Shown here piece after piece: positions 7,075-32,536 of a DNA stretch of 64,000 nucleotides (position 1 is its first letter; each line of letters opens with the position of its first letter). The translations under genes and the position numbers were made by a program. The DNA is taken from contig NC_047063.1 of the NCBI RefSeq assembly GCF_902459465.1, positions 8,246,001 to 8,310,000 on the forward strand, in the 5' to 3' direction. Origin of the DNA: Asterias rubens (Eukaryota). The notes under the pieces are model-generated. The model searched no databases. It was not told the origin of the DNA and saw only the letters and a program-made list of their open reading frames with translations.

Positions 7075-10000
7075 GATGACCCCACCAAAGAAAAAGAGAT
7101 TGCTACATACAGCAAGGGCCAGTACTTTGGAGGTAGGTTTTGTAGTAAAAATAATAACAAGTTCTTATATGCATTTTGTTGAGTCAAAAATTTGACTTCA
7201 TAAGATGGCATGCCATGTTCGTTTCAAGGAAAATCGTGCAATTCTTAGGCATATTTGTGTGGATCATTGTATTCTACTCTAAAAATATCTCTCTATCCAT
7301 GTGCATTTTATAACAAACAGTTTCAAGCTTTTGTCATAGACCAACTAGCCTGATCCAATGCCAACAGGTCCCTTTAAAGCCAAATGACACGAGTCCAATT
7401 AATAACAGAAATGAATGCTACTTCTGCGTTTGTTTCAGTATAAATCAAGAGTTTCCAGGAGTCTATTTTATCTTGTTACCTTGGGCTTTTCAAAAACTGT
7501 TTTTCATTTTCTTGTTGTCGAACAGAGCTAGCTTTGATCACAAACAACCCACGTGCTGCCTCAGTTTACTCTTGTGGCTCCGTCAGATGTGCCTGTAAGT
7601 ATTCAAGCATTGTCAAGGGTTCTATCAATTTGTACATATATCTGACAGATTATGTATCTTGTACTAGTATCTCTTTGTTAACCATCACATATGAATGTTG
7701 GAATGAACCTGCTCCCCCTTGCCTAACTGAACTTGGCACTCCTTACCAGCCCATAGGCCCACTCCGTTCCAGTTGTCGATTTCACAAAACTCTTTCTAAC
7801 TTAGGATTAATCTTATGACTTAGGACAAGTCCCAACCCTGCACTGTAGCATGCTGACCTTAAGATTAATCCTAAGTTAGGACGAGTTACTCGTCCTAACT
7901 CGAGATAAGACGAGTCCTTACTCTTTGCGAAATTGGCAGCAGCTCAGATACAAGGATTCTCACAAGACCTCAAACCAGATACTCTTCATCTTGCCAGAGG
8001 TTTTAATGCAGCTGCACAAACAAATAGGTCATGCTATTTCACTTACTGAATTCAAAACATCCTTTATAACTCACCCTTTCCAGACCTATTTCGTGAGAGG
8101 CTATTTATTTCATTTTCATACCCTCATATTGTTAAAAACAATTGCTTTTATATCATTGTTGTGAAGTGTTTTTGTACCTTTTCTGTGCAAAAACGCTTTA
8201 AAAATGCTTAGATTATAATTATATTTGTCCTTTGCGATATTTGTTTATCTTAATCTAATCCAAAACTTCATTTTTTAATAAATTGTATGATAGAATGTAC
8301 AGCATGTTCTGTCTTTTAAACCTTTTATGTAATGTGTTTCTTATTTTTCTACTTCTCTGTGATTACATTTACATTGCTGATTGTCATCATTAAGTGATGA
8401 CCAGGGGCCGATTTCACTAACGTCTATGTTTGCGATCATCGCTAACACACTTGCTATGAGATCGCAAACCTCAAATCCATCGCAATTGCGATGTCCCTAA
8501 TTCTGCGTTTCACTAAAGTCATCACAATTGCGATGAGGTTAAAAGGGAAATCAAGTTTTTGTACGAGGCTAAAAGTAGTGACCTTTGACATCCCGCAACA
8601 AAATCGTCGGTCGTCGCTCGTAATGAAATGGCATTGTGCAGTTTATATGTAAATCGTTGTCATGTTGGTGCACACGAACTATTGTGGACGATGTTTAGGC
8701 ATTTACAAAGGGTTAAAGCATTTATAGGCCTATGGCCTCTATTATAATTTTAGATTTTAATAAACAGTTTTCGTAAATCTGTTGTAACGGTGGGATAGAT
8801 GAAAATTCTGACATATATCTGTCTAATAATACTAAGCTTCACTCTGTCAATTTGCCAATACATTACACATTTTTTCTAAAAATGATGGTTAAAATAATCG
8901 AACCCATATAGTATCTCCTTTTTACCGATATTAAGGGGCTCTTTGCTGCAGTTGCGTCGCTGATAGTTGTCATCGGCAATCTGAGTCTACCAGGTAAAAG
9001 ACCGCAAGACTAAAATAATGTAGCGCCACTCATTTTACTCTAAATCACGGACAATTTATACGTCAAAACGTACACCGCTATAACTATAAGCATAGAATGG
9101 CGCAATGTATCATAAGTTTGCGATGAACTTTTACTTTGCGACCACTAACATCGCTAAATAAAACTTTGCGACGAGTATATTCACCGTTAAGTTTTAGTGA
9201 AATCGTTGGCTAAAAATCCATCGCTAAGTTGCGATGGATTTTAGATTTAGCGAGCGATTTCGGCGTTTGCGATGACCAAAGCGCATTAGTGAAATCGACC
9301 CCAGGATTGTAGATGGGAATGCGTTTAAAATATACTGTGACTTTTTAAAAGCAATATTTTCACAGAAATCAGGGAAAGTACTGAGTATACAGTGCTTAAT
9401 TCACATCGGTGTATGAGTAAAAGACATCATATTCTTTATCCCGATGCAAAAATAACATCTATTATGTTGTATTTTCATCTTTTGTTTTCTCCTTATACCA
9501 ATGTGTGTAAGCACTGTATGCTCAGTACTTCCCTGAGTTCTGTGAACAAAAGGCATTCAATCCCACCTGAGTAATAAACCTGTGGTATAAAGATGCACTT
9601 ATTTAACAAATCAACTGTGCATTTTTGTTTTGTTACCTAGTAGGCCTACATCTTGTATTAATTTGTATTTTGTTGTCTTTGTTTCTCTACAGCACATAGG
9701 GACATGTTTTAGCTCTTATTGAACAATTAATTAATGCATTTTTGTTTTGTTAACAAGTAGGTCTACATCTTGTATTTGTATTTTTTTTTTCTTCTTCTCT
9801 ACAGCGCATAGGGACATGTTTTAGCACTTATTTTTGAAACAATTAATTCATGCATTTTGTTGTTGTTACCTAGTAGGCCTACATCTTGTATTTGTATTTC
9901 TCTACAGCGCATAGGGACATGTTTGAACACTTTGTGTTATTCGTTAATTATTATATTAGACAGTGCTTACACAGGGGTCAAACCAAATTAATATTATTCT

Positions 10001-10510
10001 CACATGATATGTAATGGTTCAGTTTAGGTATTGGTTCAGTTGTAGATGTGAATATTATTTGAAATCATTAATCAAATTGAAATTTGTCAGTTTTTGTTTA
10101 GAGACATATTGTGGCTTGTAGTGTATTTTGTACTGTATTATGGTAAAACCAAACTTAATGTAGTTTTTGTAAGTTTGATATAAAGGTTGCGAATCGAGGA
10201 TAATAAATTGAAATTTTACTTTTTGAGACATGGTGGCCACTAAAGAAGTACACTGTGTGGCTTTGGTGTACATGTATACAGACATATTTACCTAAACCTT
10301 ACAGTGTTGTAGTAATGTCTCCCCCATATCTCAAAATGGCTTAATATTGAATTGAACTATCAATAAATCTTGTCTCTTTCCTTCCATAATCCAGTCCTAG
10401 ATGTGAATGCATTCGAGAGGTTGCTAGGTCCCTGTATGGACATCATGAAGAGGAACATCGGACACTACGAGGAGGAAGTAGAAAGAATGTTCGGCAAAGG
10501 ACCCAAATGA
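7075..10510 (+). CDS. PRKAR2: cAMP-dependent protein kinase type II regulatory subunit, 3' part (last 3 coding exons; CNB-B domain)
   Basis: Exons 7075-7132 ([19 protein letters not shown]), 7526-7594 ([23 protein letters not shown]) and 10395-10510 ([38 protein letters not shown]). All have AG/GT boundaries and consistent phase. GQYFGELAL..PRAAS is the phosphate-binding cassette; [16 protein letters not shown] is typical of RII. No upstream exon was found in 1-7074. Confidence 0.96.
7775..7935. mobile_element. Hairpin-rich MITE fragment
   Basis: Perfect 20-bp inverted repeat CTAACTTAGGATTAATCTTA / TAAGATTAATCCTAAGTTAG, plus the palindrome TAGGACGAGT-TACTCGTCCTA. Confidence 0.7.
8405..9301. 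mobile_element. About 900-bp non-autonomous PIF/Harbinger-like element with CAG target duplication
   Basis: TIR GGGCCGATTTCACTAA / TTAGTGAAATCGACCC, CAG on both flanks, and subterminal TTGCGA/TCGCAA arrays. Confidence 0.8.
9618..9930 (+). repeat. Triple tandem repeat, about 117-bp unit
   Basis: TGCATTTT..GTTACCTAGTAGGCCTACATCTTGTATT..TCTCTACAGCGCATAGGGACATGTT starts at about 9618, 9735 and 9851. Confidence 0.85.
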
Positions 10511-11066
10511 TGACGCTATTCTTTCCCCCTCCCCACCCCCTTCTCTCATAGAACAACTCCCCCCCCCCCTTCAAACACCTCCTCACAACACACCAACTGA
10601 CCAACTGCCTACACAGGGATTAAATGACACACTACATGCCCGAAGGTTATAACTGAAGCTACCACAAGCAACGGACAGCGAACCAAAATGGACTCATCAC
10701 TACATCTGGGTCTCAACTTCAACGGAGCTGCTTAAGGGAGCAGCAAGATATTGCTTAGAAACATTCTGCTAAGCAAAAATTAAGCAGGGTTGCCAGCCGC
10801 TAAGCGTATTTGGAATTCCTTTTTTGGCTGGTAAACTTACTCTGTATATCTGTTTTTATGCTTAGCTGCTACTTGTTGTGCTCAATCAACTCTACGAAAT
10901 TGGGCCCAGATAGTTTGGTAGACAATTTGCTTAGCGGCCTTAGGGCTTAACCTTCGGGAGTACATGTGTTAGGGGAAGGTACAGCATTTATAAATCAAGA
11001 GCTGAATGGGAAGAAACTCAGGGGACTGTCGTGTAACTTCCCTTAAGAATATTGATAACCAGGACC

Positions 11067-14200: not shown

Positions 14201-16199
14201 TTCTGTTGCTCAAAGCTGTTGCTACTTCCTTATTTACATGTTTGCGAACATCTGAGATCAAAGTCAGGTTTGTTTCCATCGGGGCCAGATTCATGGCTCT
14301 GCTTATTCGATGAATTCTGCGCTTACGATCATCAATTTTCGCTTACAGGTCAAGCGCTAAATTTCTGCTTAAGCTGTGTAAGAGAAGAATGCCTAGAAAA
14401 GTAGAGAATGCATTGGCACATGCACAAATTCTCTGCTAACCTGTGAAATAAGGGCAGAATTCCCTGCTTTTGTTAACAAGCAGAGCCATGCAGGGCCCAG
14501 TTTCATAAAGCTTAGCAAATGTCCAGACTGAGCAAGAAGTGGTGTTCTGGCTGGTTACTTACTTTTTCTTAGCACACGTTTTTGGTGCTAAGTAAGTTTG
14601 TATGCTTACAGGCTTGATGAAATTGAGCCAAGATGGATTCTCTGTGCTGTAACAGGAAACACACTCAAAAAGATACCTGTGTTTGGTTTAAAAACAAAAA
14701 GACAAAATTTCAGAAATTTGTTTTGAGAAGTTGCTATCAAATGCCTCATGAGTATGTGTGGTATTCTTATCATTGCATTCATTGCTCGTCGGTTTTTACC
14801 TAACAGCTACTAGCCATTACTGAACACCGCCGGCTAATCACACTGTACAGAATTTGATGTTTCTTTGTTAATCGTTATTGTTCAAGAGATTTTTTAATCC
14901 ACAAACTTTAGAGTTAGTGTTGAATTTTGAAAAAAGTGTTTCAAAACCGCTGTTTCTGATTTTTACAGACGGTGTTTGTGTTGAATCTTCCACTGCCCTA
15001 CAAATGTGCGGCTATTTTTGGGGTTTTAATGATAAAGGCAGAAATGAAAGGAATTTGTCATTATTATTATTTTTATTTTTTCAGATAGAAATATTTATCC
15101 ACCTGGCTATTTTTATTTTTTAATTGTACACTGGTTTTAGTTGAAAAACAAATGTGCTCAAAATTGTGAAACTTTCTTTGGGGGTCAAATTTCTGACTCT
15201 TAGAAAAATACACTTGAATGTAAAATGTAAGTGACGCATCTTGTAGTTTTGACAGAAAAACGGGTCCCCTCTCTTCAACTGTTAATTTATTTCTGACCTG
15301 TTGTGATTCACAAGGGCACCAGTCTATGAAGGTGCTAGCCTCCTGTCGAGTCATATTTACACTTTAAAAAACAAAAAGACAGTTGATGCGAAAATATAAA
15401 TGGTGATCGCTTAGATGCACTCTCCACTGACTTCATTTAATTAAAAAAAAAAGACCTAAGAAATAATTTAAGTATGCCCTCAACGCCATAAAAACACTAG
15501 CCTTATGTATATATTATTTGTTTTTTAGAAGCCAGGTTGGTGAAAGCTTAAATCAGTAGAATGTTATTTTATTATGTACATTTTGAGCCACATCAGAGTT
15601 GGAGTCGTACATAGCATTTATTATGTTTAAAGAGGCATGTTCATTTTGCGGTATACAAATTTGCCGATGTTTGTTTAGAAAATTATATATTTAAATGTTA
15701 TCTTAAATATTGTGGATAAAAAAAAAAGTGATTGTGAATAAACCAGTTTATCAATTTAAAAATCACAGTCCAGAGTTGTGTTATTTCTTTATAATTTCAG
15801 CCTTTAATTTTGCCAGACTTTTTCCTAACTGCCCAATTGTATCGCAGGAAATCCAGACCGATTGTTGGAATACCGGAACTGAGAATCATTTATCAGTTTT
15901 CTAGTGCATTGAAGGACAATTTAGAGTAAACAAAATGTAACATTGTAGAGACTTCTGTACTTTGGCCTTCAAAAGTTGCACAGGCACATCTATTTGTACC
16001 AAAATTAAAAGTAAATTTATTGTATTGCTCTTAGTCTTGGGTGATGTAAAGCTTCTAAAAGTTCTCTCTAAGATAATATAATTATTATGTATTTTCCCCC
16101 TTTGATCATGAGAACAAATGCCGTCTGCTCACCACATGTGGTGCAACATTTTATATGGCAATTAATGACAATGACACATCGCTTGTATTGTGTTTAACC

Positions 16200-16485
16200 A
16201 TGGAATTTATTCGTCCATGGTATAACCGTTCACTCAGTCAATCGTTGAACGTTGTATTTCTCAGTAATTATTCATATCACTTCATAAATATGCAACACAA
16301 CGTCACGCGTATTGACCAATCACTGTGCTCGTCAATTATCACGAACCTGCTTCTGTACCGTGCATCTCATTACTTGCTCATTGAGATATGCATGCAATAT
16401 CATCACAGCCGGCCTAGCACTCGAGGAGATCAAACGCCATTTTTGTTTTTTCCTTGCGACAAACTTCAAAATATACGGGGTGAAA
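16200..16485 (+). promoter_or_regulatory. Putative promoter/5'UTR of the secreted peptide gene
   Basis: Local CpG enrichment, with an ACGTCA CRE half-site at 16300-16305 and CCAAT at 16316-16320, upstream of the ATG at 16486. Confidence 0.45.
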
Positions 16486-18951
16486 ATGAAGCACATCTCG
16501 GCAGCACTGCTGCTCTCCGTACTGCTGTTTCACGCTGTCCTCGCTGATGCATTAAAGGTTCGTTTTGTGGGACAAATTTTCTTTTTAAAGTGCACATTTC
16601 CGTAAATAAGACTAAAAAGGAAGGAATCCATATTTTGTATTTGATGAGAATATTTTTGTAGCTTCTAATTCTTACCTATTCGACCTTGACGTGAAGATGT
16701 TCACATTTTGTTTCACACACATATTCTGTGAACTAGGTTCTTATTAATTTTGGTTTTTACCCAGACACCGATGTGTGTTAGCACTGTATACTCAGTATTT
16801 TCCTAAGTCCTGTGGAAAAAAATTCACAGGCATATTACATGGGTGGGATTCGAACCCACGACCCTTGCAATTTTAAATATATGTAAATAAATTAAATAAA
16901 AATAATAACTATAATAATAACAAAATACAAAAAATAAATAAACTCATTAATTAATTATTAAAACATAATCAACAACAAACAGACAAATTATATGTAGGCC
17001 TAAATGTTAATCAGTGTTCTTGTCCACTGATTCAATTAATTTGAAAGACGTCAGAGATAACCAAATCAGCCATTCATGCAGCTAACAATGATCCACCTGC
17101 TTTTATTAATTTCACTATAGTGGTTTTGTTTTATTGGAGATCAGTTTGGATATTTGGCCAAAATTGCAGGGTTGATACCAATTGTTCTAACAAATGCAAT
17201 ATTCAAATAAGTGTATTCTAAACTAGTATGAGAAGTGGTACATCAATGTTTGGAGAAGAAAAAACCCCACCCAATTTAATCATTCCAATATGGAAACATT
17301 TTGTATGATTAAAAAAGTAAATTCCACAAAATAAAGCTCAGTTTCTTAAGATCAAAGCTTCACTTTTCATTTGTAGCTTATTTGATGCTCAAAAGCCATA
17401 GTTTTTGGTACTAAAACTTAAAGGCAATGGACACTATTGGTAATTACTCAAAAAAATTATCAAGTTTAGAATTTGAGGTCTCGAAATCAAGCATCAGAAA
17501 GCACACAACTTCGTGTGACAAGGGTGTTTTTTCTTTCACTATTATCTTGCAACTTCGACAACTGATTGAGCTCAAATTTTCACAGGTTTGTTATTTTATG
17601 CGTATGTTAAGATGCACCAACTGTGAAGACTAGTCTTTGACAATTACCAATAGTGTCCACTGTATTTTATATGGTTTATTCATTTGATATTGTTTGCATA
17701 ATGGCCAGATTTAAAATTGGGCTTGGTGGGCAGTTAATGCAGATAATGCGGTCAAAATACGCCTCAATAATCACTTGTCCTGTCCATAGGGATTTGGTTT
17801 AAAATCTATTAAGTCTCCTTTAATCCATCTAAAGCTATTTCATTATTAAATCATTATCTTATTCAGATTGGTAAAGTATGTACTTTCTGTGTTGTTTTTA
17901 TGTGAATCAATTTATAATTAATAGAAACCTATATAATAGAAACCTTTATATCGTATTTCCACCATGCAAAGTTTCAAATCCTACTAATAGAAACCTGTTT
18001 TGGATTTAATCGGGCAGGCTAGTTGAAATCTTGAAACCAATTAAGAACTCACTCCGCAGCAGTGAAGTTAATAAAGAGAAGTCCCCTCGATCCACTAGGC
18101 AAAAGTAGTAGTCCCAGTCGGTTTCCTACCTTTCACCCAGATTGTTAATAAGCAGGACAGCTCTTCTCAGAACTAAGTAGTTTCCCGAATCCCGAAAATC
18201 TATTCCGCAGTAATCAGGTAGTAGAATAAATGACAAGACAAGTTCTCAAGAACAAATCTTCATAGCAAAGTACACATGGTGTTACTGTGAACTGAATAAA
18301 ATACATCGATAAAGCATGCATGCAACCCATTCCTACCTGATACAGTCAAACATGCCAAACAGCGCTGATGCACAGTAACAAATTTCATGAGGACCACATA
18401 AACATTAACAGGACTTGAGAGGGAAAAAGCCTACTAACAGGTTTTGGCAACTCTAAACTCTTATACATGAAGCTCTTATACATACATAATGTGGATTTGA
18501 ACCCTGGCCTGATCAATCATGACACTTGTGTCCTTGAGCAAGGCACTCTATCATAATTGCTTCTCTCCATCCAGGAGTACAAATGTTATAAATGACGAGC
18601 CATAATAATTGGCTTTTGGGAAAGACTTTACTTTCTTATAAACATGTACATAGTGTTAGAGGCTGGTATTGTTGTCGGATTTGCCATGATCTTACAACGA
18701 TCCCATCTTCTTTCTACTAGGACAAAACCTTAGACAAAGATCTCCTGGAGCGAACCCGACGGGCCGTTGCCCACCAGGGTCTTATCAATCCTGCCGATTT
18801 GAGGATGCTGAAGGTCCGACGAACTGATCCGTATCGTCGCGCTCCTCGCATGAAGAGATACCGCAGAATGGCGGAGGACCCCGAGATGTTCAAGAGGGGA
18901 CCAAAGAGCGAGAAGTACATCACAAGAGTGAAGAAAATTGTCAAATCTTAA
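16486..18951 (+). CDS. Uncharacterised secreted cationic prepropeptide, 100 aa (signal peptide, acidic pro-region, multiple dibasic sites)
   Basis: Exon 16486-16557 (MKHISAALLLSVLLFHAVLADALK, donor GTTCGT) joins in phase 0 to exon 18721-18951 (acceptor tttctactag; DKTLDKDLLERTRRAVAHQGLINPADLRMLKVRRTDPYRRAPRMKRYRRMAEDPEMFKRGPKSEKYITRVKKIVKS*). Both exons are GC-richer than the AT-rich flanks. A CpG-rich promoter-like region lies upstream. Confidence 0.78.
17422..17666. mobile_element. Internally deleted copy of the Kolobok-like MITE, in the intron of the secreted peptide gene
   Basis: Same TIRs, shorter body. Confidence 0.75.
18030..18290 (-). repeat. Unclassified dispersed repeat; related copies at 5420-5720 and 63730-63990 (+)
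   Basis: Shared GAGAACTTGTCTTG..TTATTCTACT and GGGGACTTCTC..TTCACTGC.GC.GAGTGAGTTCT blocks. Confidence 0.65.
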
Positions 18952-19632
18952 AACAATGATCTTTCTTATTGATATGGTGAGTAAGATGAGATGCTGTTTA
19001 TGAAGGGTGGGTTGGGTCTCTTTTCTGTAAACTTAGATGATGGTCTCAAGTCTTTAAATAAGTTTTCTCAGTTTTGTTTTGACATTCTGCATACTACAGC
19101 AAAATTTCGAGAAAGAATCTGCGAAACTTTGGGCCATTAATAATTGTATGCACAAATTTGGGTTCAACTTGTTTTATTTTATCTTTTTGTTCTTCTGTCC
19201 TTTATTCCTAGTTCAAGTAACAATTTGGATTTTCTTGGGCAGAAACTCTGAACAGAACAAACTGCCATACTCTTGCTACTTGTGACTACGCCAGTTGGGA
19301 TAGAACCAAATCAATCATCACCTCTGCAATAGAGCTGGAATATCACTGAACACCATTTACCTCCCAACTACCAATTCGGCACGGACTACAATCATGGAGT
19401 TTGAATCAAACTAGTCAAATAATCACAACCAAAAATGTTCTATTTAACAATAACTCTACTTATATTGTAAAATCCAGAAAATAAAACGGAGGCAATGATA
19501 TTGTATTGGTTTTTCAATTTTTACTCAAGGGGTTGAATGCATATTGTACATAAATTACATAAATGATAACACTTCAAATTTAAATAGTTTGTATCTTTTT
19601 AAATCTATGTTGAAATTGTACCTTGTTCTTAA

Positions 19633-19970
19633 AGGGAGGGTATGCCTTTCATAAAAACTCACTTGGTTGAAAGCAATGCAGCTGTTGATAATGTATAATA
19701 TTTTGAGAAATTTTTCAGGAACGTGGTGCGGGAGAAAGGGATGCAAACAAAATCAATCTGAGAAACACTTTATGCATGAAATGTTTCTCAGATTTTTTTA
19801 ATTATTTACAGATTATGTTTCCTGGGACATAACAGCTACAGATTTTTGGCGATATTTTAAAAACAAAACCACCTTTGAAAATTAAATTCTTGCAGGTTAG
19901 TTTTACTGTATCTTTACACTTATATAGGAATATAACAACTGAACAGTTCCGAAAACCAAACGTACACTTT
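19633..19970. mobile_element. Diverged TTAA-flanked MITE
   Basis: TTAA at 19629-19632 and 19971-19974, with degenerate TIRs. Confidence 0.55.
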
Positions 19971-21334
19971 TTAAAGGTGCAAACAAATTCATTGGTGCAG
20001 TGAGGTGATGCACAACTCTTAACATTTTAGTTGATGTCAAAATATATACATGTAGTAGAGCTTTGTACTGACTTTAATAATATAAATAAATAAAGTATTT
20101 ACTAAAAGCTATTTGACATACTGTCTAAATTCTTAGGAACACTGATAATCATCAGAGTTGTTCGTAGTAAGTTACTCTCCAAGAAAAATAAGTCATTGTC
20201 AAAATAATCAGTTACAAATTAAAACTTGGTGTATAATTCAAGAAATGCATGTTTTGGTGCAATGTTCAATTTTACATTCCAGGAGCTGGATACAAGGCCT
20301 TCGGTTTTTTTTAAACACAGTAATTTGTTTGAACCAATTTTGTTTTTATTCCATCCAAATGGAACAACGATTTACAAATCAAGTCTTGGGATTGAGTCTT
20401 TCTACTGTGTTTATAACATTTATCTCATCTCTTCATTTTGATAAGCTAACACAATTTCTGTCTACCCCAAGACCTCATTTGTTTCATAATTAATTATTGT
20501 ACATTTAGATCATATACTTTACAAGTATATCATTGGCGTATCATGTATTAAATTGGTGGTAACATCTACATGGTACTTTTTAAGAAGTCTGGATACTTTG
20601 ACAAAATTAAACTATTTCTTCAAAGCTTACAAACAATGGACCCATTCTTATAAAGCTGTTAAGCAGAAACAGAGATTGGCAAGTTCTTCTGCTGGGCCAA
20701 AATGATCAGGGAACCACCAGTCACAAACAACATTATATTTTGGCTTGTTATCAACTTAACCTAAGCAAGATTTTGCTGTGCCAAGAGTTGTTTTGTGTTT
20801 GGGGTGGTGTTTAGCAGCTTTATGAAAGCAGGCCCTTTTTGGAGTTATTTCTATGATGAAATTGCAAAACAGTCATGCTTACTGTTACAATAAAATGTAT
20901 TTATTTATGGAACTTTTAGAAATTAACAATCATGTACACAGAGATATGGATTAAGTAGACTGTTTTTGTTTCACATATCAAACAACAATTATCCCAAAAA
21001 CTTGTAGTTCAACTTTGTCAATCTAATAATCAATGCGGTCTGTGTCATAACAGAAGAAGATCAAACTAAAAACACTCTAGTAAGATAATATGAAATACCA
21101 GAACTTTTTTGGTTCATCAGATGCAGAAGATGCAAGTCATCATTTTGTTTGTTTTTGAGATTCAACAATTTAAAAGAAAAGTATTTATATTGCAAAGTAT
21201 GTTTTAATAACTTATTAATCATAAACTACATTTTAATATAATAAATTATGGGGATAAAAATGACAATTTCTGTTTCAAATGAGTTTGTATTTTAGAGAGA
21301 GGTTTCAATCACAAAAAGTCAATAATATACACAT

Positions 21335-21473
21335 AATGAATGTTTATGAGTGCAATGGTGCGAATATGTTCATGAGTTGAAAGGTGGAATGTTCGGAGCC
21401 GAGTTGAATGGAACATTCCAGCTTTCAACGAATGAACAAATTCGCACCATTGCACGAATGAAAAACATTCATT
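21335..21473. repeat. About 140-bp imperfect palindrome (terminus of a non-autonomous element)
   Basis: Arms AATGAATGTTT..GTGCAATGGTGCGAAT..GTTGAAAG.TGGAATGTTC and their reverse complement. Confidence 0.8.
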
Positions 21474-22302
21474 ATTTTTTTTATATAACATCCAAGTAGA
21501 TCTTTGTCATTTTGATTGAAAGATACAACTTTCAAAACAAACAATTTCAACTGTAGAAGCCGAATGCTAGTAATTTTACTATGCCTTCTTGCAGTAACAC
21601 CTGCTGTGTTACCAAAGACACGCGCACGCAGTGATGTTTTTACTCGGCTTTTTCGTTCCATCCGAAAAGTACCATTGCACGCTGCCAGCGTGCAATGGTA
21701 CTTTTAGGATGGAACGAACAAGCACGGTGAGTGACTCAGAGTGCAGTGGTACTTTTATTTGCTATCACGTGACGGACAATCCTCCAATCAAATGGCAAGG
21801 ATCTGCTTGGGTGTTATATAATACTTTTTATTTTGTATAAAGTAACAATTGTTTACATAAATTAGAACTCTAAAACAAGAACTCCCTTTAGTTATTACAC
21901 CTACTAACTGTTCTCAAAACATGTGAACAGCTGACAATGAATCATGCAGACAAACAGTTTCAAATGTAAAATGAAATTCAAGAAACTCTTAACATTTTAA
22001 AGTTTTTAATCTTGGCAACAGCCTGCTATAGTAACTGTCAACACTTTAAAAGTTTCCTCCCCAAAAATGTACAGTGTCTCTGCTTGCTGCCGAATACTGC
22101 GCTGACGGCGCCCTCCCAAGCTAACAATTCTATCGGTTGAAGCGCAGAATTCCATTGTAAGCAGAGGCATGCAATATAGCAGAATGATGATTCATAATTT
22201 CAATAGTTTGTCATCTATTTATTTGCTAAAGTTTTGACCAAATGAGACTATCAGTTTATGTTCAGGTGACATGTTTTACTCGTAAGTTTAGAACATTTGA
22301 TA

Positions 22303-25300
22303 CTAATAAGTCTTGATTTTTCTGATCTTGCTTTGTTGTAGTCGAAGTGCGTTGCTGATCTCGGCCATCGCGGCTGATGAAGAGTTACTCAGGCATCGTT
22401 TCTTCTCTTGCTGTCTGCTCACTTTACTCCCAAAACTCATCTATGAGAAATGAGTAACATAAATTCAGTTAAAGGTAATGTTGTCAATGGGAGACTTTTG
22501 GGAACACAGTAAGAAAGTGTACAAAAGAGCCCAATTTTGTAACTTAAGCACAAAAACAGAATTATAATTATCAGAATAAGAATAGCAGCCAAACTACCAT
22601 GTCACATGTACAATTTTTGATTGGTATCCTGCTATTTTTTTGCTTAGCAGAAAAATGTTAAGCAATATTTTCTGCTTTTGGCCTTGTTTAGGCAAGATGA
22701 TGAAGAAAATGACACGGGAGGTATCCGTGTCTTATATGCAATCTGTTCCAGCTAAGCCAGCATCTTACTTGCTTAGCAATTTTCTCTGTGCTTACCAGCT
22801 TTAAAGAATTGTGTCAAATGTAACTTACGGAAAGTGGCTTGCGGGTAACCACCGTCTCATCACTGCTCTCATCATCATGTATTATCTGGATGTAAGGAGT
22901 ACTGCAGATATCTGAGCCTCTTGTAGGTACAACTTGTTCCTCAAAGACATCCCTATGGGATTGTTGCTTCGAACTGGACTTCTGAAACCCTGATGACAGA
23001 TTTATTGAATGTACTAATGTTACAGTAAAATACACGATAAAACAATTATTCCCCTCTGCCCATTCTTTGCTTTTGTAAATTTGGACTTGGAAGGTAATTT
23101 TAAAAAGTCTTGATAAAGATACTTACAAGGTGAATCGGGCAGTTTCAATGAGAATATCATGTCTTCAGAGCTGTCTTCGTGATCCGAGTAAGATGGCATA
23201 GTGTCTAGACTCACTGCTGATGGCTGCTTAGCTGGATTCATTGAGGTTACTCCTAAACAGATACAGAAGAGAAAGACTGGTTTACTTGGCTAAGTGGTTT
23301 CTTTCCTCATCTTCCAAATCTTGGACCCTAGTTTGAACCCTGCCCTGGGCACTATGTTTTCCCTGGAAAAATACACCTTTAACTAAAACTTCACTCCTTG
23401 TTCTTTCTCCAAATTTTGGTTATTTTAGTGATTAAGTTCTGAGAATTCACAACTAGAATTCACAACTAGAATTAGTATGCTGGTCTCAGTACTTTAAGGT
23501 TTATTCTGATGGGAAACTACTTAACTGACCCCTCTTTCAAAATAAATCTATTCCAATTTTGAAAAACCATAATTCTGCATGTGAGATGTTTATAAACAAG
23601 ATGACTCCAACCTACCTTTGATGGTTTGTTTGGATGCTTGTTTGTTTTTTCTTTGCACCTGCTTCCTTCTGACTGGTTTTGAAGCTGGCTGATGGATAGT
23701 CACCACTTCCATCTCAGATTCATCTCGAGAAACCAACCCCTGTCTCAAGTCTTCAGCCCAAGTGCTCTGAATCTCAGCTACAGAGCTACTTTTGCATTGC
23801 ATTTCCTTTGATTTCTTATTCGTCTGATTCTGTCGACTCTTCACTAACTTTTCTTTCGGGGCTTTGATGGAGCTGGCACTCAGACTCTTTGCACTGGTAA
23901 CTCTCTTCTGTGAATAGATGTTATCATTCTGCGACACCTTTGTGGAAGCCTTTCGCTGACTCCTGCTGTTCTGCCTTTCCTGTGGGTTTTTCTCCTTTGG
24001 TGCTTTTCTCTTTCTCACCACTGGAAGAGTTTTTTGAGGAGGTTCAATAAACTCATAAACATCTTCCTCTTTCAACCAGTGGCAGGCCTCTGGGTCCTGG
24101 AGAGGCTTTGTAGTGTTGACTTCAGAGACTGTTTGACTGTTTCTTGTCTTGATACGTGGTTGAGTTTCTGGCTTCTTCTTCATCTGGTTAGCTGTGTCAG
24201 GATTAGGCTTCTTAGCTTTGACTCTTGCTGACTGCCTCTTGGACTTTACTGCAACCTGGTATGGCTTCCTAACTTTCTTCTTTCTTGTAGGAGCTTGAAG
24301 GACTGGTGCCTCATTACCCTGATTGGTTTGTTGTTCTTGTGTGGGAAGAACAGCTTCTTGAGGCTTCATCACTTGGGGAGCGACAGCAGCAATTGGTGAT
24401 GGCCTCACCTTGTTCGCATTCCACCGTCCAGATGTGGTGGCTGAACTTGTCGGAGACATCAAATGAGGTACAGCTTCATGTTGCTGTTGAAAGTGGAATC
24501 CAGATGGTCTACCATCTGGGCCAAGATTGCCACCTCCTTGATTTGAAATTGGCAACCTAGGTTGAGTCACAGCTGGTTGGTTGTAGGTGTAAGGAAGACC
24601 ACACTGTGGGTAAGACTCTCTGTTTTGGAGACTTGGCTGTGCTGGCCATGGTGGAAGCCTGACATTGCTACCATGGTTGAGGGTTGGTTCAACCATCTGA
24701 CGAGTAGCGCCACCAATCAGATGATAGCTTGGATGAATCTGATTGATCATACTCTCTTGATGTCTGCTTCCTGACTGAATCTGACATCCGCTCTGCTCAT
24801 ACTGAGCCACGGCTTGCCAGGAGCGTGGTCGATTGTCGCCGTCCATAATCGGTGCTGCCATTAACCTTTGACCTGACTGCAGACCTCGGACCCTCTTGTC
24901 GATGACCTCTGATGACCCGGCTTCATTATGGAGACTTCTCTGATGTTGATCCTGTTGAAGCTGTTGGATCTGTGTCTTGCAGAAAGCCTGTTGTTCCTCT
25001 TGCATCTTGTCAATGTGTTCTCTGTTTATCTTTTGTTGTTCTGTGTACACCTCCATGAGAGAGTGTACGACACGCTCGTCACGCTCTTTCTTGGCAGTTT
25101 CCAGTTGCATCTCAAGAACCTCAATCTTGGCATCTTTCTGTGGAATTTGCAAATATTCCTCTATAAAATATCATTCAATAAAATTTAAATCAACAATATC
25201 TCAAATGTAAGGCTGAAGATCAATCATATTATGAAAAATAATTTACTGCATCAGTTTGCATCTTGTTATTATTAATCGTAAAGATTTGAGATGCTCCAAA

Positions 25301-29075: not shown

Positions 29076-32000
29076 TGTCGAAGACGAAGACGAAGACTGC
29101 GCACTTTACACAAGGGAGTTGGGTAAGTGAAGTTTGTATATAGTATAATAATTAATACACGTGTGAGTGTGACTATTTATTACATTTGATTTGAGATTTC
29201 TTGTTCATGTGTAATTATTCTCAACAGATAAGGTAAAGTAAAAACTGTTTTTTAGTTTGTTCAAGTAATTACCATTATTATTATCAATGACCAAATTATA
29301 ATTATAATAATATGACTATTTGAGCATGAATTATATCTTTTTTTTTACAAAAAAAAACATTTTTGTTTTTGTTTATTTTAGATTTGACAATTTTGCTAAT
29401 CTTTTATTTTCAATTATTCATTTTGGGAAAAACATACTTCTCAGTGAGTAAAACATTTTGGGCGCAGAAATCAGAAGATGAAAAAAAGAAAGATTTCAAA
29501 AACATTGAAGCTAAACTTTTTATTAAATTATTATCAGCTAAATCATGATGAAGTAGCTTATTATACCGTACTTAATACCAATGTAAAAAATATTAGGCAA
29601 AAATGTGATATTTTTGTAATGGAAAGCACTGAAACAGTAATTCACTTTGTGCTAATTTGTCAAATTTTTTATTCCTTGCAGTTCCCTTCAGGCTATTACG
29701 GTCATTTCCGGAGTAAATCTAGGAATGATTTCGTGAATGAGTATCGACAGCAAGCGAAACCCTCGCCTCCAGAAAAATTCACCAGGAAACTAACGGTAAG
29801 GATATGAAACAATATCTCTCCAATAATAAGATAAAAATGGATTATATTCTATCCATTGAAGATGAAGATTAGGGTTACATTTTCCAAGATTAGGTTTTTC
29901 CAATACATGTATCATGTTCTGACTTGTGCAAAACGAGCAAATGTTTTGAGAGAATGTTATTGATTGATATTATTGATCTTCCATTGCTGAAAAAGACTTA
30001 CTTTTGTTAGGAGCATGTAGTCGTCAGGGACACACAATTAAAACATATTGATTCACATGGACAACAAATCCTCCACTGGAAAATCTGACGTACTCTGAGT
30101 TTAGTCACTATGTTCACTCTGTCTGAACTCCGTTCTTTTTAAGAAATTACAAGAGCATAACAGTTGGATATAGTTCAGAATAAAACATATTTTGTTATAG
30201 GGGGGCCTAACAGAGTGCATTTATAATGCACCATATTTGTCATAAATAGACAATCCTGGTGCAGAGTTATCAATTTAGTTGAGCATGATGAGAATTATTT
30301 TATGAAATAAAATAACCCTCGATACATGGTGAGTTGGCGCACATTTTGCCTGACCATTCCGGAAACAAACCCCTTCTCTTTATCATTATGATAATTATAC
30401 TGTTGGGTTCTTTTACATGCATTACTAAACGAAAGATGAACCAGTAATGGTTAAGTGTCTTGCTTAAGTGTCAAGACTCGAACCCACACTCTGCTGATCA
30501 GAAACACCAGAGCTGGATTCCGGTGTGCTTTATTGTTATCGGCCACGACACACCACTAAAGTATCCAATTTATCATAAACTTTGTTAAAATGATTTGTTG
30601 CTTGGCAACTTTTTGTTCAAATATATAAATGTATCCTATAATCAGAGAGTCGTGATATGTCAGCATAGTGTTTATTCAATCAAATCAATGCAGAACGGTC
30701 ACCATCAGATCACAGTGCGGACTTTGTACAACTTGATCTGAAAACCCTATCCTTCCACTGTACACACACAAAGTAAATATTTGTGCAACTCCTATCCAAC
30801 ATGTGCAATGGGTCATTGAATAAATGAATGCTCCTTTAGTCATGCTTAGGTAACAAAGTACATCGCTATTTTATTTGTTGTATTGAATACCATGGACGCT
30901 AAATCTAAAGTACATAAACGATAGGATCGTGTTTGCAAGAAAAACACATTTTTATTTACTTATTGTACACATAGAGATAGAGAAAGTGATTCTAGTTATA
31001 TAATTCAAGTATTGTGTTTAAATATTTGACCACATTGTTTTTGTTATTTCTCCTACTTCAGGCGCGTCCAACTTTACACCACTTTTCTCACCATGACAAC
31101 CGGTTTTCATTCCTGAACACTGTAACATCCTTCCAAGATGTAAGTTCAAAAGTTGTTTACTCGTGGAGGTTAAAGGCCAACTTGATTAAAATCACTCAAC
31201 TTAATTTGACTATTTATCCTTGTTTATCTTTTGCGGCCTTGAAAATAACCCCTGGCACCCACAGCAATTGCTGTGGTGCCTTGTGTATTTGCTGTGGTGT
31301 TATTTGCAAATTTCCAATTCAAACGCAATTTTTTGTGTACATAGAAGTGCCCCTGAAAAAAATTAGCGGTGTCCCTACTTTGATATTTGAACTAGTGTTT
31401 ATATCCCTGTAGGTTTTTCATCAATGACCCATAAATGAAAAGTGAAATCAACACCAGTGCCTCAGAAAACCAGTCCAAGTTATGATGTAACATATGTCGC
31501 AGCACAGACTGAAGGGATATACATTTTCCATTGTCCTTTTTTGTTCAAGTCCATTATAAGATTCCAGAGTGCTGTTTTTTTTCCAAGCAGCATATAGGGG
31601 CTGTTGCCGAAACTCAGCATTTTTGCCCAGCACAACCTCCATCTTTTAATAGTTGGATCCGAAAGTTTTTTTTTTTAAATTTATTTGTTTATATACATTT
31701 TGTTTTCACGATAGGGTCTTGGCAAGAAAAAGGTTCAACATCAGAGGACGGGCAAGTTTACACCAGACTTCATTTCATGGGTTCCTCACAAAAGAGAAAT
31801 AAGAGAAGCCGGTCCAGTTTCATCAGTATACAGAGAAACGTACAGAAACTCAGACAAGAGCAGAGTTCCTCAAGTCCTGGTTCCAACAGTCAGCAAACCC
31901 CCGAAGCAGCTCTCCGCTTCAGCACCTGCATTTCTCCCAACGCCGTATTCAGATCCAGCCGACATGGTTCAAGAGAATCCGGTTACATCCTACCAGATTT

Positions 32001-32536
32001 CTCACAGGCATTTGCAGCCGAATCCAACTGTACACACGAACATGAATACAGGCAGAGTGGAAGAGGATCCGGTCCCCCTCCAGAAAACTCACGTTTACAT
32101 CAACCCTAAGATAGATTCGATTTATGACCGACCCAAACAGCGTGGATCGTTAACCTCGCTGAGGAGAGCTAGAACTGGTTCAGCTCCGTTATTCCGATCG
32201 AGCGTGGCAGATTGTATGAGGTGGCATGTGCCACATGAACCCACCCCTCCACGACCTAAAACTGTTACAGGGACCTTTCCAGAGGTCAGGGGTGCTGAGA
32301 CAGGTTCGCTGGAGGAGATCCGACAACCCATGCCACCACAGACATTAGGTAAAGGTACCGTTTGTCCAACCACTGCATGGACCACACCAAGCCAATCTAA
32401 GCCAGAACAGTCCAGAATGGATGCAAGTGTTGACACCAGACCAATGGGTCAAACCCATAATGGTCAAATGTCAGGAATGGACACAAGTTATTCTAGTTCA
32501 CCGTCAGCTTCAGCAGATGTTCCAATGGCGGAATGA
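29075..32536 (+). CDS. CIMIP7: Ciliary microtubule inner protein 7 (C3orf84 orthologue), 353 aa
   Basis: Exons 29075-29122 (MSKTKTKTAHFTQGSW), 29682-29795 (FPSGYYGHFRS...PSPPEKF), 31062-31139 (HHFSHHDNRFSF) and 31715-32536 (GLGKKK...SVADCMRW...). All junctions are phase 0. Matches recalled human C3orf84 motifs GSWHNNGFYGHYRS, HFFSKHDNRTSF, GIGRRKD and GVSECLNW. Confidence 0.9.

What the first reader, a model, noticed from the sequence alone, without database searches (positions are those of the whole stretch)
16486..18951. Orphan secreted prepropeptide with prohormone-like architecture, between PRKAR2 and IHO1
Seen: a 100-aa spliced ORF with a textbook signal peptide (likely cleavage VLA-DA after residue 20), an acidic pro-segment and a furin site RTRR. 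A 62-aa Cys-free mature region follows (19 K/R against 6 D/E) with further sites VRR, YRR, RMKR, RYRR, FKR and KK. Predicted products include AVAHQGLINPADLRMLKV, MAEDPEMF and GPKSEKYITRVKKIVKS. I do not recognise it as any echinoderm neuropeptide family I know (SALMFamide, NG, TRH, luqin, PP/orcokinin, calcitonin, CRH, relaxin). Inference: an undescribed peptide-hormone/neuropeptide precursor or a cationic host-defence peptide. No Gly-dibasic amidation signal is present.
Basis: partly seen in the sequence, partly recalled or inferred. Interest (0 to 1): 0.8.

Follow-up and report, generated by a model that had tools for sequence, protein, structure and literature searches.

The report
Orphan secreted peptide precursor in sea stars
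This is a real, spliced, conserved small gene of Asterias sea stars whose 100-residue product looks like a secreted, protease-processed signalling-peptide precursor with no known family; its function is untested.

Summary
The GT..AG joint is in RNA contigs of two A. rubens runs and in 41 raw reads of two A. amurensis runs. A second intron (18977-19211) and a 2-kb 3'UTR ending near 21255 complete a ~2.4-kb mRNA.

The window is A. rubens, and the record held here calls no gene at this place. A. amurensis RefSeq has the identical protein as 'uncharacterized protein' (XP_071810471.1).

Purifying selection is clear. The rubens/amurensis CDS differs by 5 substitutions, all synonymous, against 3-7% divergence plus indels in UTRs and introns. 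A 93-aa orthologue from an unidentified species gives dN/dS 0.11 with saturated dS.

Conserved features are the signal peptide, an R-X-K/R-R site followed by AVxHxGLINPADL, and a basic 48-residue core. The pro-segment and C-terminal tail vary.

No relative turned up in 1.84 billion representative proteins, Pfam, PDB, the 40 published A. rubens precursors, or open full text.

A prohormone-like secreted precursor is the best reading (about 0.5). The antimicrobial reading is weaker. Tissue of expression, processing and receptor are unknown.

The parts
16431..16557 (+). Exon 1: 5'UTR (at least from 16431; the A. rubens contig starts at 16451) plus CDS 16486-16557. It encodes the signal peptide (residues 1-20, 16486-16545) and the first 4 residues of the pro-segment.
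   Evidence: X1 contig piece 16451-16555; A. amurensis reads carry variants at 16431/16432. The CDS is identical in A. amurensis.
16558..18720 (+). Intron 1 (2163 nt, GT..AG, phase 0). It is full of repeats that are abundantly represented in RNA runs.
   Evidence: joint 16555>18719 (cut +2) in 2 contigs and 41 raw reads. 7.4% substitutions plus large indels against A. amurensis.
18721..18762 (+). Rest of the acidic pro-segment (residues 25-38), ending in the furin-type site RTRR (18751-18762).
   Evidence: The orthologue has RDKR at the same place and a 7-residue deletion in the pro-segment. dN/dS is about 1.4 on few sites.
18763..18903 (+). Conserved basic core (residues 39-85). It starts with the AVxHxGLINPADL block, followed by three more conserved R/K-X-K/R-R sites (KVRR, RMKR, RYRR), MAEDxxMF and KRGP.
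   Evidence: invariant columns; pN 0.12 while synonymous sites are saturated.
18904..18951 (+). Variable C-terminal tail (residues 86-100) and the TAA stop codon.
   Evidence: dN/dS 0.36.
18952..18976 (+). First 25 nt of the 3'UTR, at the end of exon 2.
   Evidence: joint 18975>19211 (cut +1).
18977..19211 (+). Intron 2 (235 nt, GT..AG), inside the 3'UTR, 25 nt after the stop codon.
   Evidence: 2 contigs plus 20 + 9 raw reads.
19212..21255 (+). Exon 3: about 2.04 kb of 3'UTR, with an AATAAA signal at 21241-21246. The transcript contig ends at 21254.
   Evidence: (contig pieces 19211-19798, 19800-20491, 20493-21254). The orthologue mRNA L001 also has about 1.7 kb of 3'UTR.

Best explanation
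The gene encodes a small secretory prepropeptide.

Proposed mechanism (inferred):
- A cleavable 20-residue signal peptide takes it into the ER.
- A furin/prohormone-convertase-type enzyme cuts after R-X-K/R-R (RTRR in Asterias), removing a short variable pro-segment.
- This exposes a conserved N-terminus, AVxHxGLINPADL. The 18-19-residue peptide up to the next R/K-X-R-R site is the most likely extracellular signal (hormone, neuropeptide or paracrine factor) acting on a receptor.
- The conserved arginine-rich middle part is either cut further at its three furin-type sites or kept as a basic extension.
- There is no C-terminal amidation and no disulfide.

Shown here: gene structure, splicing, transcription, coding constraint and conservation of the sites. 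Inferred: secretion, cleavage, which fragment is active, and signalling.
For: Gene and transcript:
- Spliced, polyadenylated mRNA in two species.

Coding constraint:
- 5 synonymous and 0 non-synonymous changes between A. rubens and A. amurensis. With about 24% synonymous sites (S = 66, N = 210), five of five synonymous has P of about 8e-4 under neutrality (my calculation).
- No indel in the CDS, although indels are common in the UTRs and introns.
- dN/dS 0.11 against P0002.

Signal peptide:
- It has a positively charged start (MK), a 12-residue hydrophobic core and small residues at -3/-1 (V..A or V..G) in both orthologues. An Asp sits inside the hydrophobic stretch of P0002, which argues against a membrane anchor.

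Cleavage sites and conservation pattern:
- All four R/K-X-K/R-R sites are kept although their letters change (RTRR/RDKR, KVRR/KSRR, RMKR/RIKR, RYRR/RYRR).
- The pro-segment is variable and has an indel, while the core is conserved. This is the usual spacer-versus-peptide pattern.

Fold and neighbours in feature space:
- No globular fold is predicted: pLDDT 63, pTM 0.26, short helices only.
- Among the named clusters nearest by protein-language-model features, most are short peptide-hormone precursors (PDH, DH31, NPY, galanin, urotensin-2B, CCK/gastrin, osteocrin). Scores are 0.81-0.87, so this is a lead only.
Against: - No tissue, cell type or peptide evidence is available, because the runs are coded.
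- No SignalP or ProP run was possible.
- No amidation signal is present, and most known echinoderm neuropeptides have one.
- The basic-pair count equals the chance expectation for this composition.
- Conservation runs through the cleavage sites and the stretches between them alike. This also fits an uncut 62-residue basic protein.
- Sites with a basic residue at P4 are typical of furin substrates of the constitutive pathway, so the producing cells need not be neurons (established knowledge of convertase specificity).
- Only three species are known to carry it, and one of them is unidentified.
Confidence: 0.5

Rival explanations
1. It is a secreted cationic effector that acts as a whole or nearly whole 62-residue basic protein. 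Possible roles are host defence, or binding of glycosaminoglycans, nucleic acids or mucus/adhesive material. It would not be a receptor ligand.
For: Net charge is about +13 and pI 11.2 after the pro-segment. An acidic pro-segment precedes a cationic part, as in many antimicrobial precursors. Conservation is continuous across the basic core. The contig word depth is high (1304) in run X2, which contains spliced RNA contigs; the tool warns that this depth is a poor measure of expression.
Against: The best helical hydrophobic moment is at most 0.5 with negative mean hydrophobicity, and the only moderately amphipathic stretch of the Asterias protein (the tail) is not conserved. The core is under strong purifying selection (pN 0.12 with saturated dS), whereas antimicrobial peptides usually diversify (general knowledge). 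Five prolines break any long helix. The pro-segment has only about -2 net charge against about +13.
Confidence: 0.2
2. It is not secreted. The N-terminal hydrophobic stretch is an uncleaved anchor or an organelle-targeting segment, and the basic part works inside the cell, as in small ER or mitochondrial membrane proteins.
For: The nearest cluster by protein-language-model features is C11orf94/Frey (0.87), a family of small proteins of about 92 aa; this is a lead only. The structure search in the Atlas gave only small single-helix membrane proteins at TM below 0.5.
Against: The hydrophobic core is only about 12 residues. It is followed by His/Asp and a -3/-1 small-residue motif, and P0002 has a charged Asp at position 16. 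The Pfam Frey family and all other families gave no hit at E up to 10. A conserved R-X-K/R-R site directly after a variable spacer has no obvious role in an anchored protein.
Confidence: 0.1
3. It is a non-coding or barely coding transcript in which the ORF is a chance feature.
For: The CDS is tiny (303 nt) at the 5' end of a 2.4-kb RNA, with an intron in the 3'UTR. An equally long antisense ORF lies on exon 2.
Against: There are 0 non-synonymous against 5 synonymous changes and no indel between the two Asterias species, while UTRs and introns diverge by 3-7% with indels. dN/dS is 0.11, and the frame, start, stop region and signal peptide are conserved in a species with saturated synonymous divergence. 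Of the mRNA of that species, only the CDS still aligns to the window.
Confidence: 0.02

Closest known systems
Small Cys-free, non-amidated vertebrate prohormones processed at furin-type sites (PTH/PTHrP, apelin, osteocrin); features recalled from general knowledge
   Same: A signal peptide and a short pro-segment end in R-X-K/R-R, followed by a Cys-free basic product without a Gly amidation signal. PTHrP also follows its N-terminal active peptide with multibasic clusters. Osteocrin is among the nearest clusters by protein-language-model features (0.81).
   Different: There is no sequence or profile similarity: no Pfam family reached E 10 and the PDB sequence searches gave only chance matches. 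Prolines interrupt the region where PTH-type ligands are helical. The C-terminus, which is the active end of apelin, is the least conserved part here.
Asteroid-restricted candidate precursors Arnp21-24 of Asterias rubens (Semmens et al. 2016, PMC4772807)
   Same: They are small (83-157 aa) precursors with a signal peptide and dibasic sites, and no orthologue was found outside sea stars.
   Different: Arnp21 and Arnp24 peptides end in Gly for amidation. Arnp22, 23 and 24 peptides carry Cys pairs. Lengths and site positions do not fit this protein. Motifs of this protein are absent from that paper's supplement. That paper's first de novo screen, a hidden Markov model, required Gly-Lys-Arg motifs, which this protein lacks.
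Linear cationic antimicrobial peptide precursors (cecropin- or piscidin-like, or Pro/Arg-rich)
   Same: A signal peptide and a somewhat acidic pro-piece precede a strongly cationic Cys-free product.
   Different: There is no amphipathic helix, hydrophobicity is low, there are no PRP-type repeats, and the sequence is strongly conserved.

Membership tests
Prohormone / neuropeptide precursor (generic class) | Cleavable N-terminal signal peptide | tested here: inconclusive
   By inspection only: positively charged start, 12-residue hydrophobic core and small residues at -3/-1 in both orthologues. No SignalP was available.
Prohormone / neuropeptide precursor (generic class) | Basic convertase sites flanking the product, conserved between species | tested here: met
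   Four R/K-X-K/R-R sites and two plain dibasic sites are conserved between P0001 and P0002, with changed letters at some. The count alone is not above chance.
Prohormone / neuropeptide precursor (generic class) | Conserved peptide next to fast-evolving spacer | tested here: met
   The pro-segment has a 7-residue indel and dN/dS of about 1.4. The core (residues 39-86) has pN 0.12 with saturated dS. The tail has dN/dS 0.36.
Prohormone / neuropeptide precursor (generic class) | Expression in neurons or endocrine cells, with processed peptides detectable | not testable with these tools
   Runs are coded and no tissue is given. No match in the supplement of the crown-of-thorns nerve-cord proteome paper.
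Prohormone / neuropeptide precursor (generic class) | Gly + basic amidation signal (common, not obligatory) | tested here: not met
   No G-K/R-K/R anywhere in either orthologue.
PTH / PTHrP / TIP39 (Pfam Parathyroid) | Match to the family profile or to solved PTH/PTHrP peptides | tested here: not met
   No Pfam family at E up to 10 for the full-length or mature parts of both orthologues. No PTH-type chain appeared among PDB sequence matches at E up to 10.
PTH / PTHrP / TIP39 (Pfam Parathyroid) | Activation of a PTH-type class B receptor | not testable with these tools
   PTH-type receptors are reported in ambulacrarians without a known ligand (PMC5627052). The arthropod ligand iPTH has no sequence similarity to PTH (PMC7224569), so sequence alone cannot settle this.
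CRH / urocortin / DH44 and PDF / DH31 class B ligands | Profile match; 18-44-residue amidated peptide | tested here: not met
   No Pfam hit and no amidation signal. The protein-language-model neighbours PDH and DH31 score only 0.83-0.86 with fewer than 135 shared features.
Linear alpha-helical cationic antimicrobial peptides | Amphipathic helix with substantial hydrophobic face | tested here: not met
   Maximum hydrophobic moment is 0.46-0.50 with mean hydrophobicity below 0 in 18-residue windows, and the best window is not conserved. AlphaFold2 gives only short low-confidence helices.
The 40 published A. rubens neuropeptide precursors (Semmens 2016) | Identity or similarity to one of them | tested here: not met
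   Descriptions of Arnp11-25 do not fit. Motif strings are absent from the supplement with all 40 sequences and from all open full text.
Frey (C11orf94), C17orf67 and osteocrin families | Pfam profile match | tested here: not met
   No Pfam match at E up to 10. Only protein-language-model proximity of 0.81-0.87.

The most novel reading that the evidence does not exclude
The conserved peptide that begins right after the R-X-K/R-R site (AVxHxGLINPADL...) could be the missing ligand of one of the ambulacrarian peptide receptors that still lack one. Zandawala et al. 2017 list PTH-, galanin-, QRFP-, NMU-, ETH- and leucokinin-type receptors as orphans. By my recall of these ligand families, the PTH type is the one on that list whose known vertebrate ligands are also Cys-free, non-amidated and start directly after such a site. 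The likeness of the first residues to the AVSEHQ start of PTHrP is recalled from memory and fails every profile test run here, so this is a lead only.
Probability: 0.06. Interest if true: 0.8.

Novelty: new member of a known kind. Interest (0 to 1): 0.45.

Why it matters
Asterias rubens is the main experimental model for echinoderm peptide signalling. Its catalogue of precursors was built largely by similarity searches and, in one de novo screen, by looking for Gly-Lys-Arg motifs. That screen would miss a non-amidated, Cys-free precursor such as this one; whether the second tool used there, NpSearch, would also miss it is unknown.

This gene is not called at all in the A. rubens record held here. 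It is a ready candidate for receptor deorphanisation and pharmacology. Several bilaterian receptor families in echinoderms still lack ligands.

If it proves not to be a signal, it is still a strongly conserved, lineage-restricted secreted basic protein of unknown role.

Tried and rejected
Searches for relatives, all negative:
- Word-indexed search of 5.8 billion proteins with exon 2 and with the two-sequence alignment found only the A. amurensis copy and P0002.
- Full HMMER profile search of 1.84 billion representatives found only P0002.
- Pfam gave nothing, apart from a chance DUF7285 hit at E 0.19 on the signal peptide.
- PDB sequence searches gave only chance hits: OspA repeats, a designed repeat protein and ribosomal proteins.
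- tBLASTn in the window found no paralogue.
- Rfam and tRNA scans of 16000-22400 found nothing.

Literature, all negative:
- Peptide strings in all open full text: 0 papers.
- Supplements of Semmens 2016 and of the crown-of-thorns nerve-cord proteome paper: no occurrence.
- Run accessions of P0002, further 'Arnp' numbers and a sea-star PTH-type ligand: nothing found.

Synteny route to more orthologues: I used the 526-aa exon of the downstream gene as an anchor. It found only A. rubens itself and one ENA contig for which no DNA is served, so distribution beyond three species stays open.

Other:
- AlphaFold2 gave a low-confidence model, so no fold search was run on it.
- Likenesses to PTHrP, DH44/CRH, PDH, apelin and NPB/NPW came to mind from memory. 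Each rests on 3-5 residues and none passed a profile test, so I treat them as chance.
- The taxon of P0002 could not be determined.

Full report
**What is in the sequence**

An ATG at 16486 opens 24 codons that end at a GT donor after 16557. An AG acceptor before 18721 opens 76 more codons that end at TAA 18949-18951. The joined ORF is 100 residues.

**Transcript evidence**

I laid two contig runs of organism A and two raw-read runs of organism B on 16000-21999.
- The joint 16557/18721 (GT..AG) is in one contig each of X1 and X2, and in 29 and 12 raw reads of X15 and X16.
- A second GT..AG joint, 18976/19212, removes a 235-nt intron that begins 25 nt after the stop codon.
- Contigs then run on to 21254, just past an AATAAA at 21241-21246.
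- The 5' end lies at or before 16431-16451.
- The mRNA is therefore about 2.4 kb: three exons, a 303-nt CDS at the 5' end and about 2.07 kb of 3'UTR.
- GT..AG on the + strand fixes the transcript strand. The equally long antisense ORF on exon 2 is irrelevant.

**Species and annotation**

Window 16300-21400 is 100% identical over 5101 bases to the A. rubens assembly GCA_902459465.3. The window is therefore A. rubens. No gene is called at this place in that record as held by the tool.

In A. amurensis (GCA_032118995.1) the same 100-residue protein is annotated as XP_071810471.1, 'uncharacterized protein'.
- Upstream on the same strand lies a gene with RIIa and cNMP_binding domains (PKA RII).
- After that comes a gene with an HDNR domain.
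- In the window I saw the cNMP-binding signature [14 protein letters not shown] in frame near 7552 on the + strand.
The IHO1 name was not verified.

**Is it a coding gene under selection?**

Yes, on two time scales.
- A. rubens against A. amurensis: the CDS has 5 substitutions in 303 nt, all synonymous, and no indel. The 5'UTR has 7.3% substitutions, intron 1 has 7.4%, intron 2 has 4.3% and the 3'UTR has 3.2%, each with indels. With about 24% synonymous sites, five of five synonymous has a probability of about 8e-4 under neutrality (my calculation).
- Against P0002, a 93-residue orthologue found on two Logan transcriptome contigs of an unidentified species: synonymous sites are saturated (pS 0.70; 0.85 in the core) and dN/dS is 0.11 overall. 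Of that 2-kb mRNA, only the CDS still aligns to the window.

**Pattern of conservation**

- The signal peptide is kept: a positively charged start (MK), a 12-residue hydrophobic core, and V at -3 with A or G at -1.
- The pro-segment is the fastest part, with a 7-residue indel and dN/dS of about 1.4 on few sites.
- It ends in R-X-K/R-R in both species (RTRR or RDKR), followed by AVxHxGLINPADL.
- The next 35 residues are basic and almost invariant. They include three more R/K-X-K/R-R sites (KVRR/KSRR, RMKR/RIKR, RYRR) and KR-GP.
- The last 15 residues vary (dN/dS 0.36).
- The number of adjacent basic pairs is not above chance for this composition (6 observed, 5.5 expected, P = 0.50). What counts is their conservation, not their presence.

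**What it is not**

- No relative beyond P0002 was found in 5.8 billion clustered proteins or in a full HMMER profile search of 1.84 billion representatives.
- No Pfam family reached E 10 for the full-length or mature parts of either orthologue. This covers the Parathyroid, CRF, Pigment_DH, Frey and Musclin families among others.
- PDB sequence searches gave only chance matches.
- The protein fits none of the Arnp precursors described by Semmens et al. 2016, and its motifs are absent from their supplement, which holds all 40 precursor sequences. Their first de novo screen, a hidden Markov model, required Gly-Lys-Arg motifs, which this protein lacks.
- Its peptide strings occur in no open full text.
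- AlphaFold2 gives no fold: pLDDT 63, pTM 0.26, short helices only.
- By protein-language-model features, most of the nearest named clusters are short secreted peptide precursors (PDH, DH31, NPY, galanin, urotensin-2B, CCK/gastrin, osteocrin), alongside Frey and C17orf67. Scores are 0.81-0.87 with few shared features, which the tool itself rates as a lead only.

**Mechanism**

The best-supported reading is a secretory prepropeptide. The signal peptide is removed, and a furin- or PC-type enzyme cuts after R-X-K/R-R. The conserved N-terminal peptide (18-19 residues up to the next site), or a longer form, acts outside the cell.
- Shown: the gene, its splicing, its constraint and the conservation of the sites.
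- Inferred: secretion, cleavage and signalling.
- Because all four strong sites have a basic residue at P4, furin in the constitutive pathway could process it. The producing cells therefore need not be neurons (established convertase specificity).
- I put this reading at about 0.5.

**Rival readings**

- Antimicrobial or other cationic effector (about 0.2). It is weakened by the lack of an amphipathic helix (hydrophobic moment at most 0.5 with negative hydrophobicity, best window not conserved) and by strong purifying selection on the core.
- Anchored intracellular protein (about 0.1). It fits poorly with a 12-residue hydrophobic core that carries Asp in P0002.
- Non-coding transcript. This is practically excluded.

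**Most novel reading not excluded**

Zandawala et al. 2017 state that receptors of the PTH, galanin, QRFP, NMU, ETH and leucokinin types exist in ambulacrarians without known ligands. The arthropod PTH-receptor ligand has no sequence similarity to PTH. A Cys-free, non-amidated peptide starting right after R-X-K/R-R resembles PTH/PTHrP in layout. The likeness in sequence is a few residues recalled from memory and fails the profile tests. I give this about 6%.

**Limits**

- The tissues behind the coded runs are unknown, so 'neuropeptide' is not shown.
- Only three species are known to carry the gene, and the taxon of P0002 is unknown.
- The protein collections clearly miss copies: A. rubens contigs hold the transcript, but no Logan protein was on record for it. 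Absence elsewhere therefore proves little.
- An attempt to reach other species through the downstream gene failed because that gene evolves too fast.

**Verdict**

This is a real, conserved, orphan, prohormone-like secreted precursor, already present as an unnamed model in one RefSeq annotation and uncalled in the A. rubens record. It is a new member of a known kind, of moderate interest, and directly testable.

Noticed in passing
window 17400-17999, also 16600-16999 and 21200-21800: Repeats inside intron 1 and just past the gene's 3' end attract enormous RNA depth: up to about 8000-11000 raw reads per strand, and contig word depth in the 10^5-10^6 range. They show hundreds of chimeric joints and loose ends. 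They look like high-copy interspersed elements transcribed from many loci. No tRNA or Rfam match was found.
   Followed up: partly
window 21340-21460 and 21660-21700: By eye there are near-perfect inverted repeats (gtgcaatggtgcgaat...attcgcaccattgcac and gtaccattgcacgctgccagcgtgcaatggtac), MITE-like, in the gap between this gene and the downstream gene.
   Followed up: no
L003 16754-21854 (A. rubens record) versus L004 10001-12867 (A. amurensis): The same gene is annotated in A. amurensis but not called in the A. rubens record held by the tool, although RNA contigs of A. rubens carry the spliced transcript. This is an annotation gap in the model species.
   Followed up: yes
window about 7520-7560 (+): An exon in frame carries the cNMP-binding signature [14 protein letters not shown], consistent with the PKA RII gene that the A. 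amurensis annotation places upstream.
   Followed up: partly
window 23593-25170 (-) and 31715-32533 (+): There is a 526-codon open exon of the 857-residue downstream gene, and a 273-codon open exon further on; neither has a Pfam hit. In the A. rubens and A. amurensis records the gene beyond the 857-aa gene carries an HDNR domain. The 857-aa gene evolves fast: only one hit, at 51% identity, was found outside Asterias.
   Followed up: partly
window 15900-16399: The 500 nt upstream of the transcript diverge less between the two Asterias species (2.4%) than the 5'UTR and intron 1 (about 7%). They contain a CCAAT box and a CGTCA half-site near 16300-16325. This is possibly the promoter.
   Followed up: no
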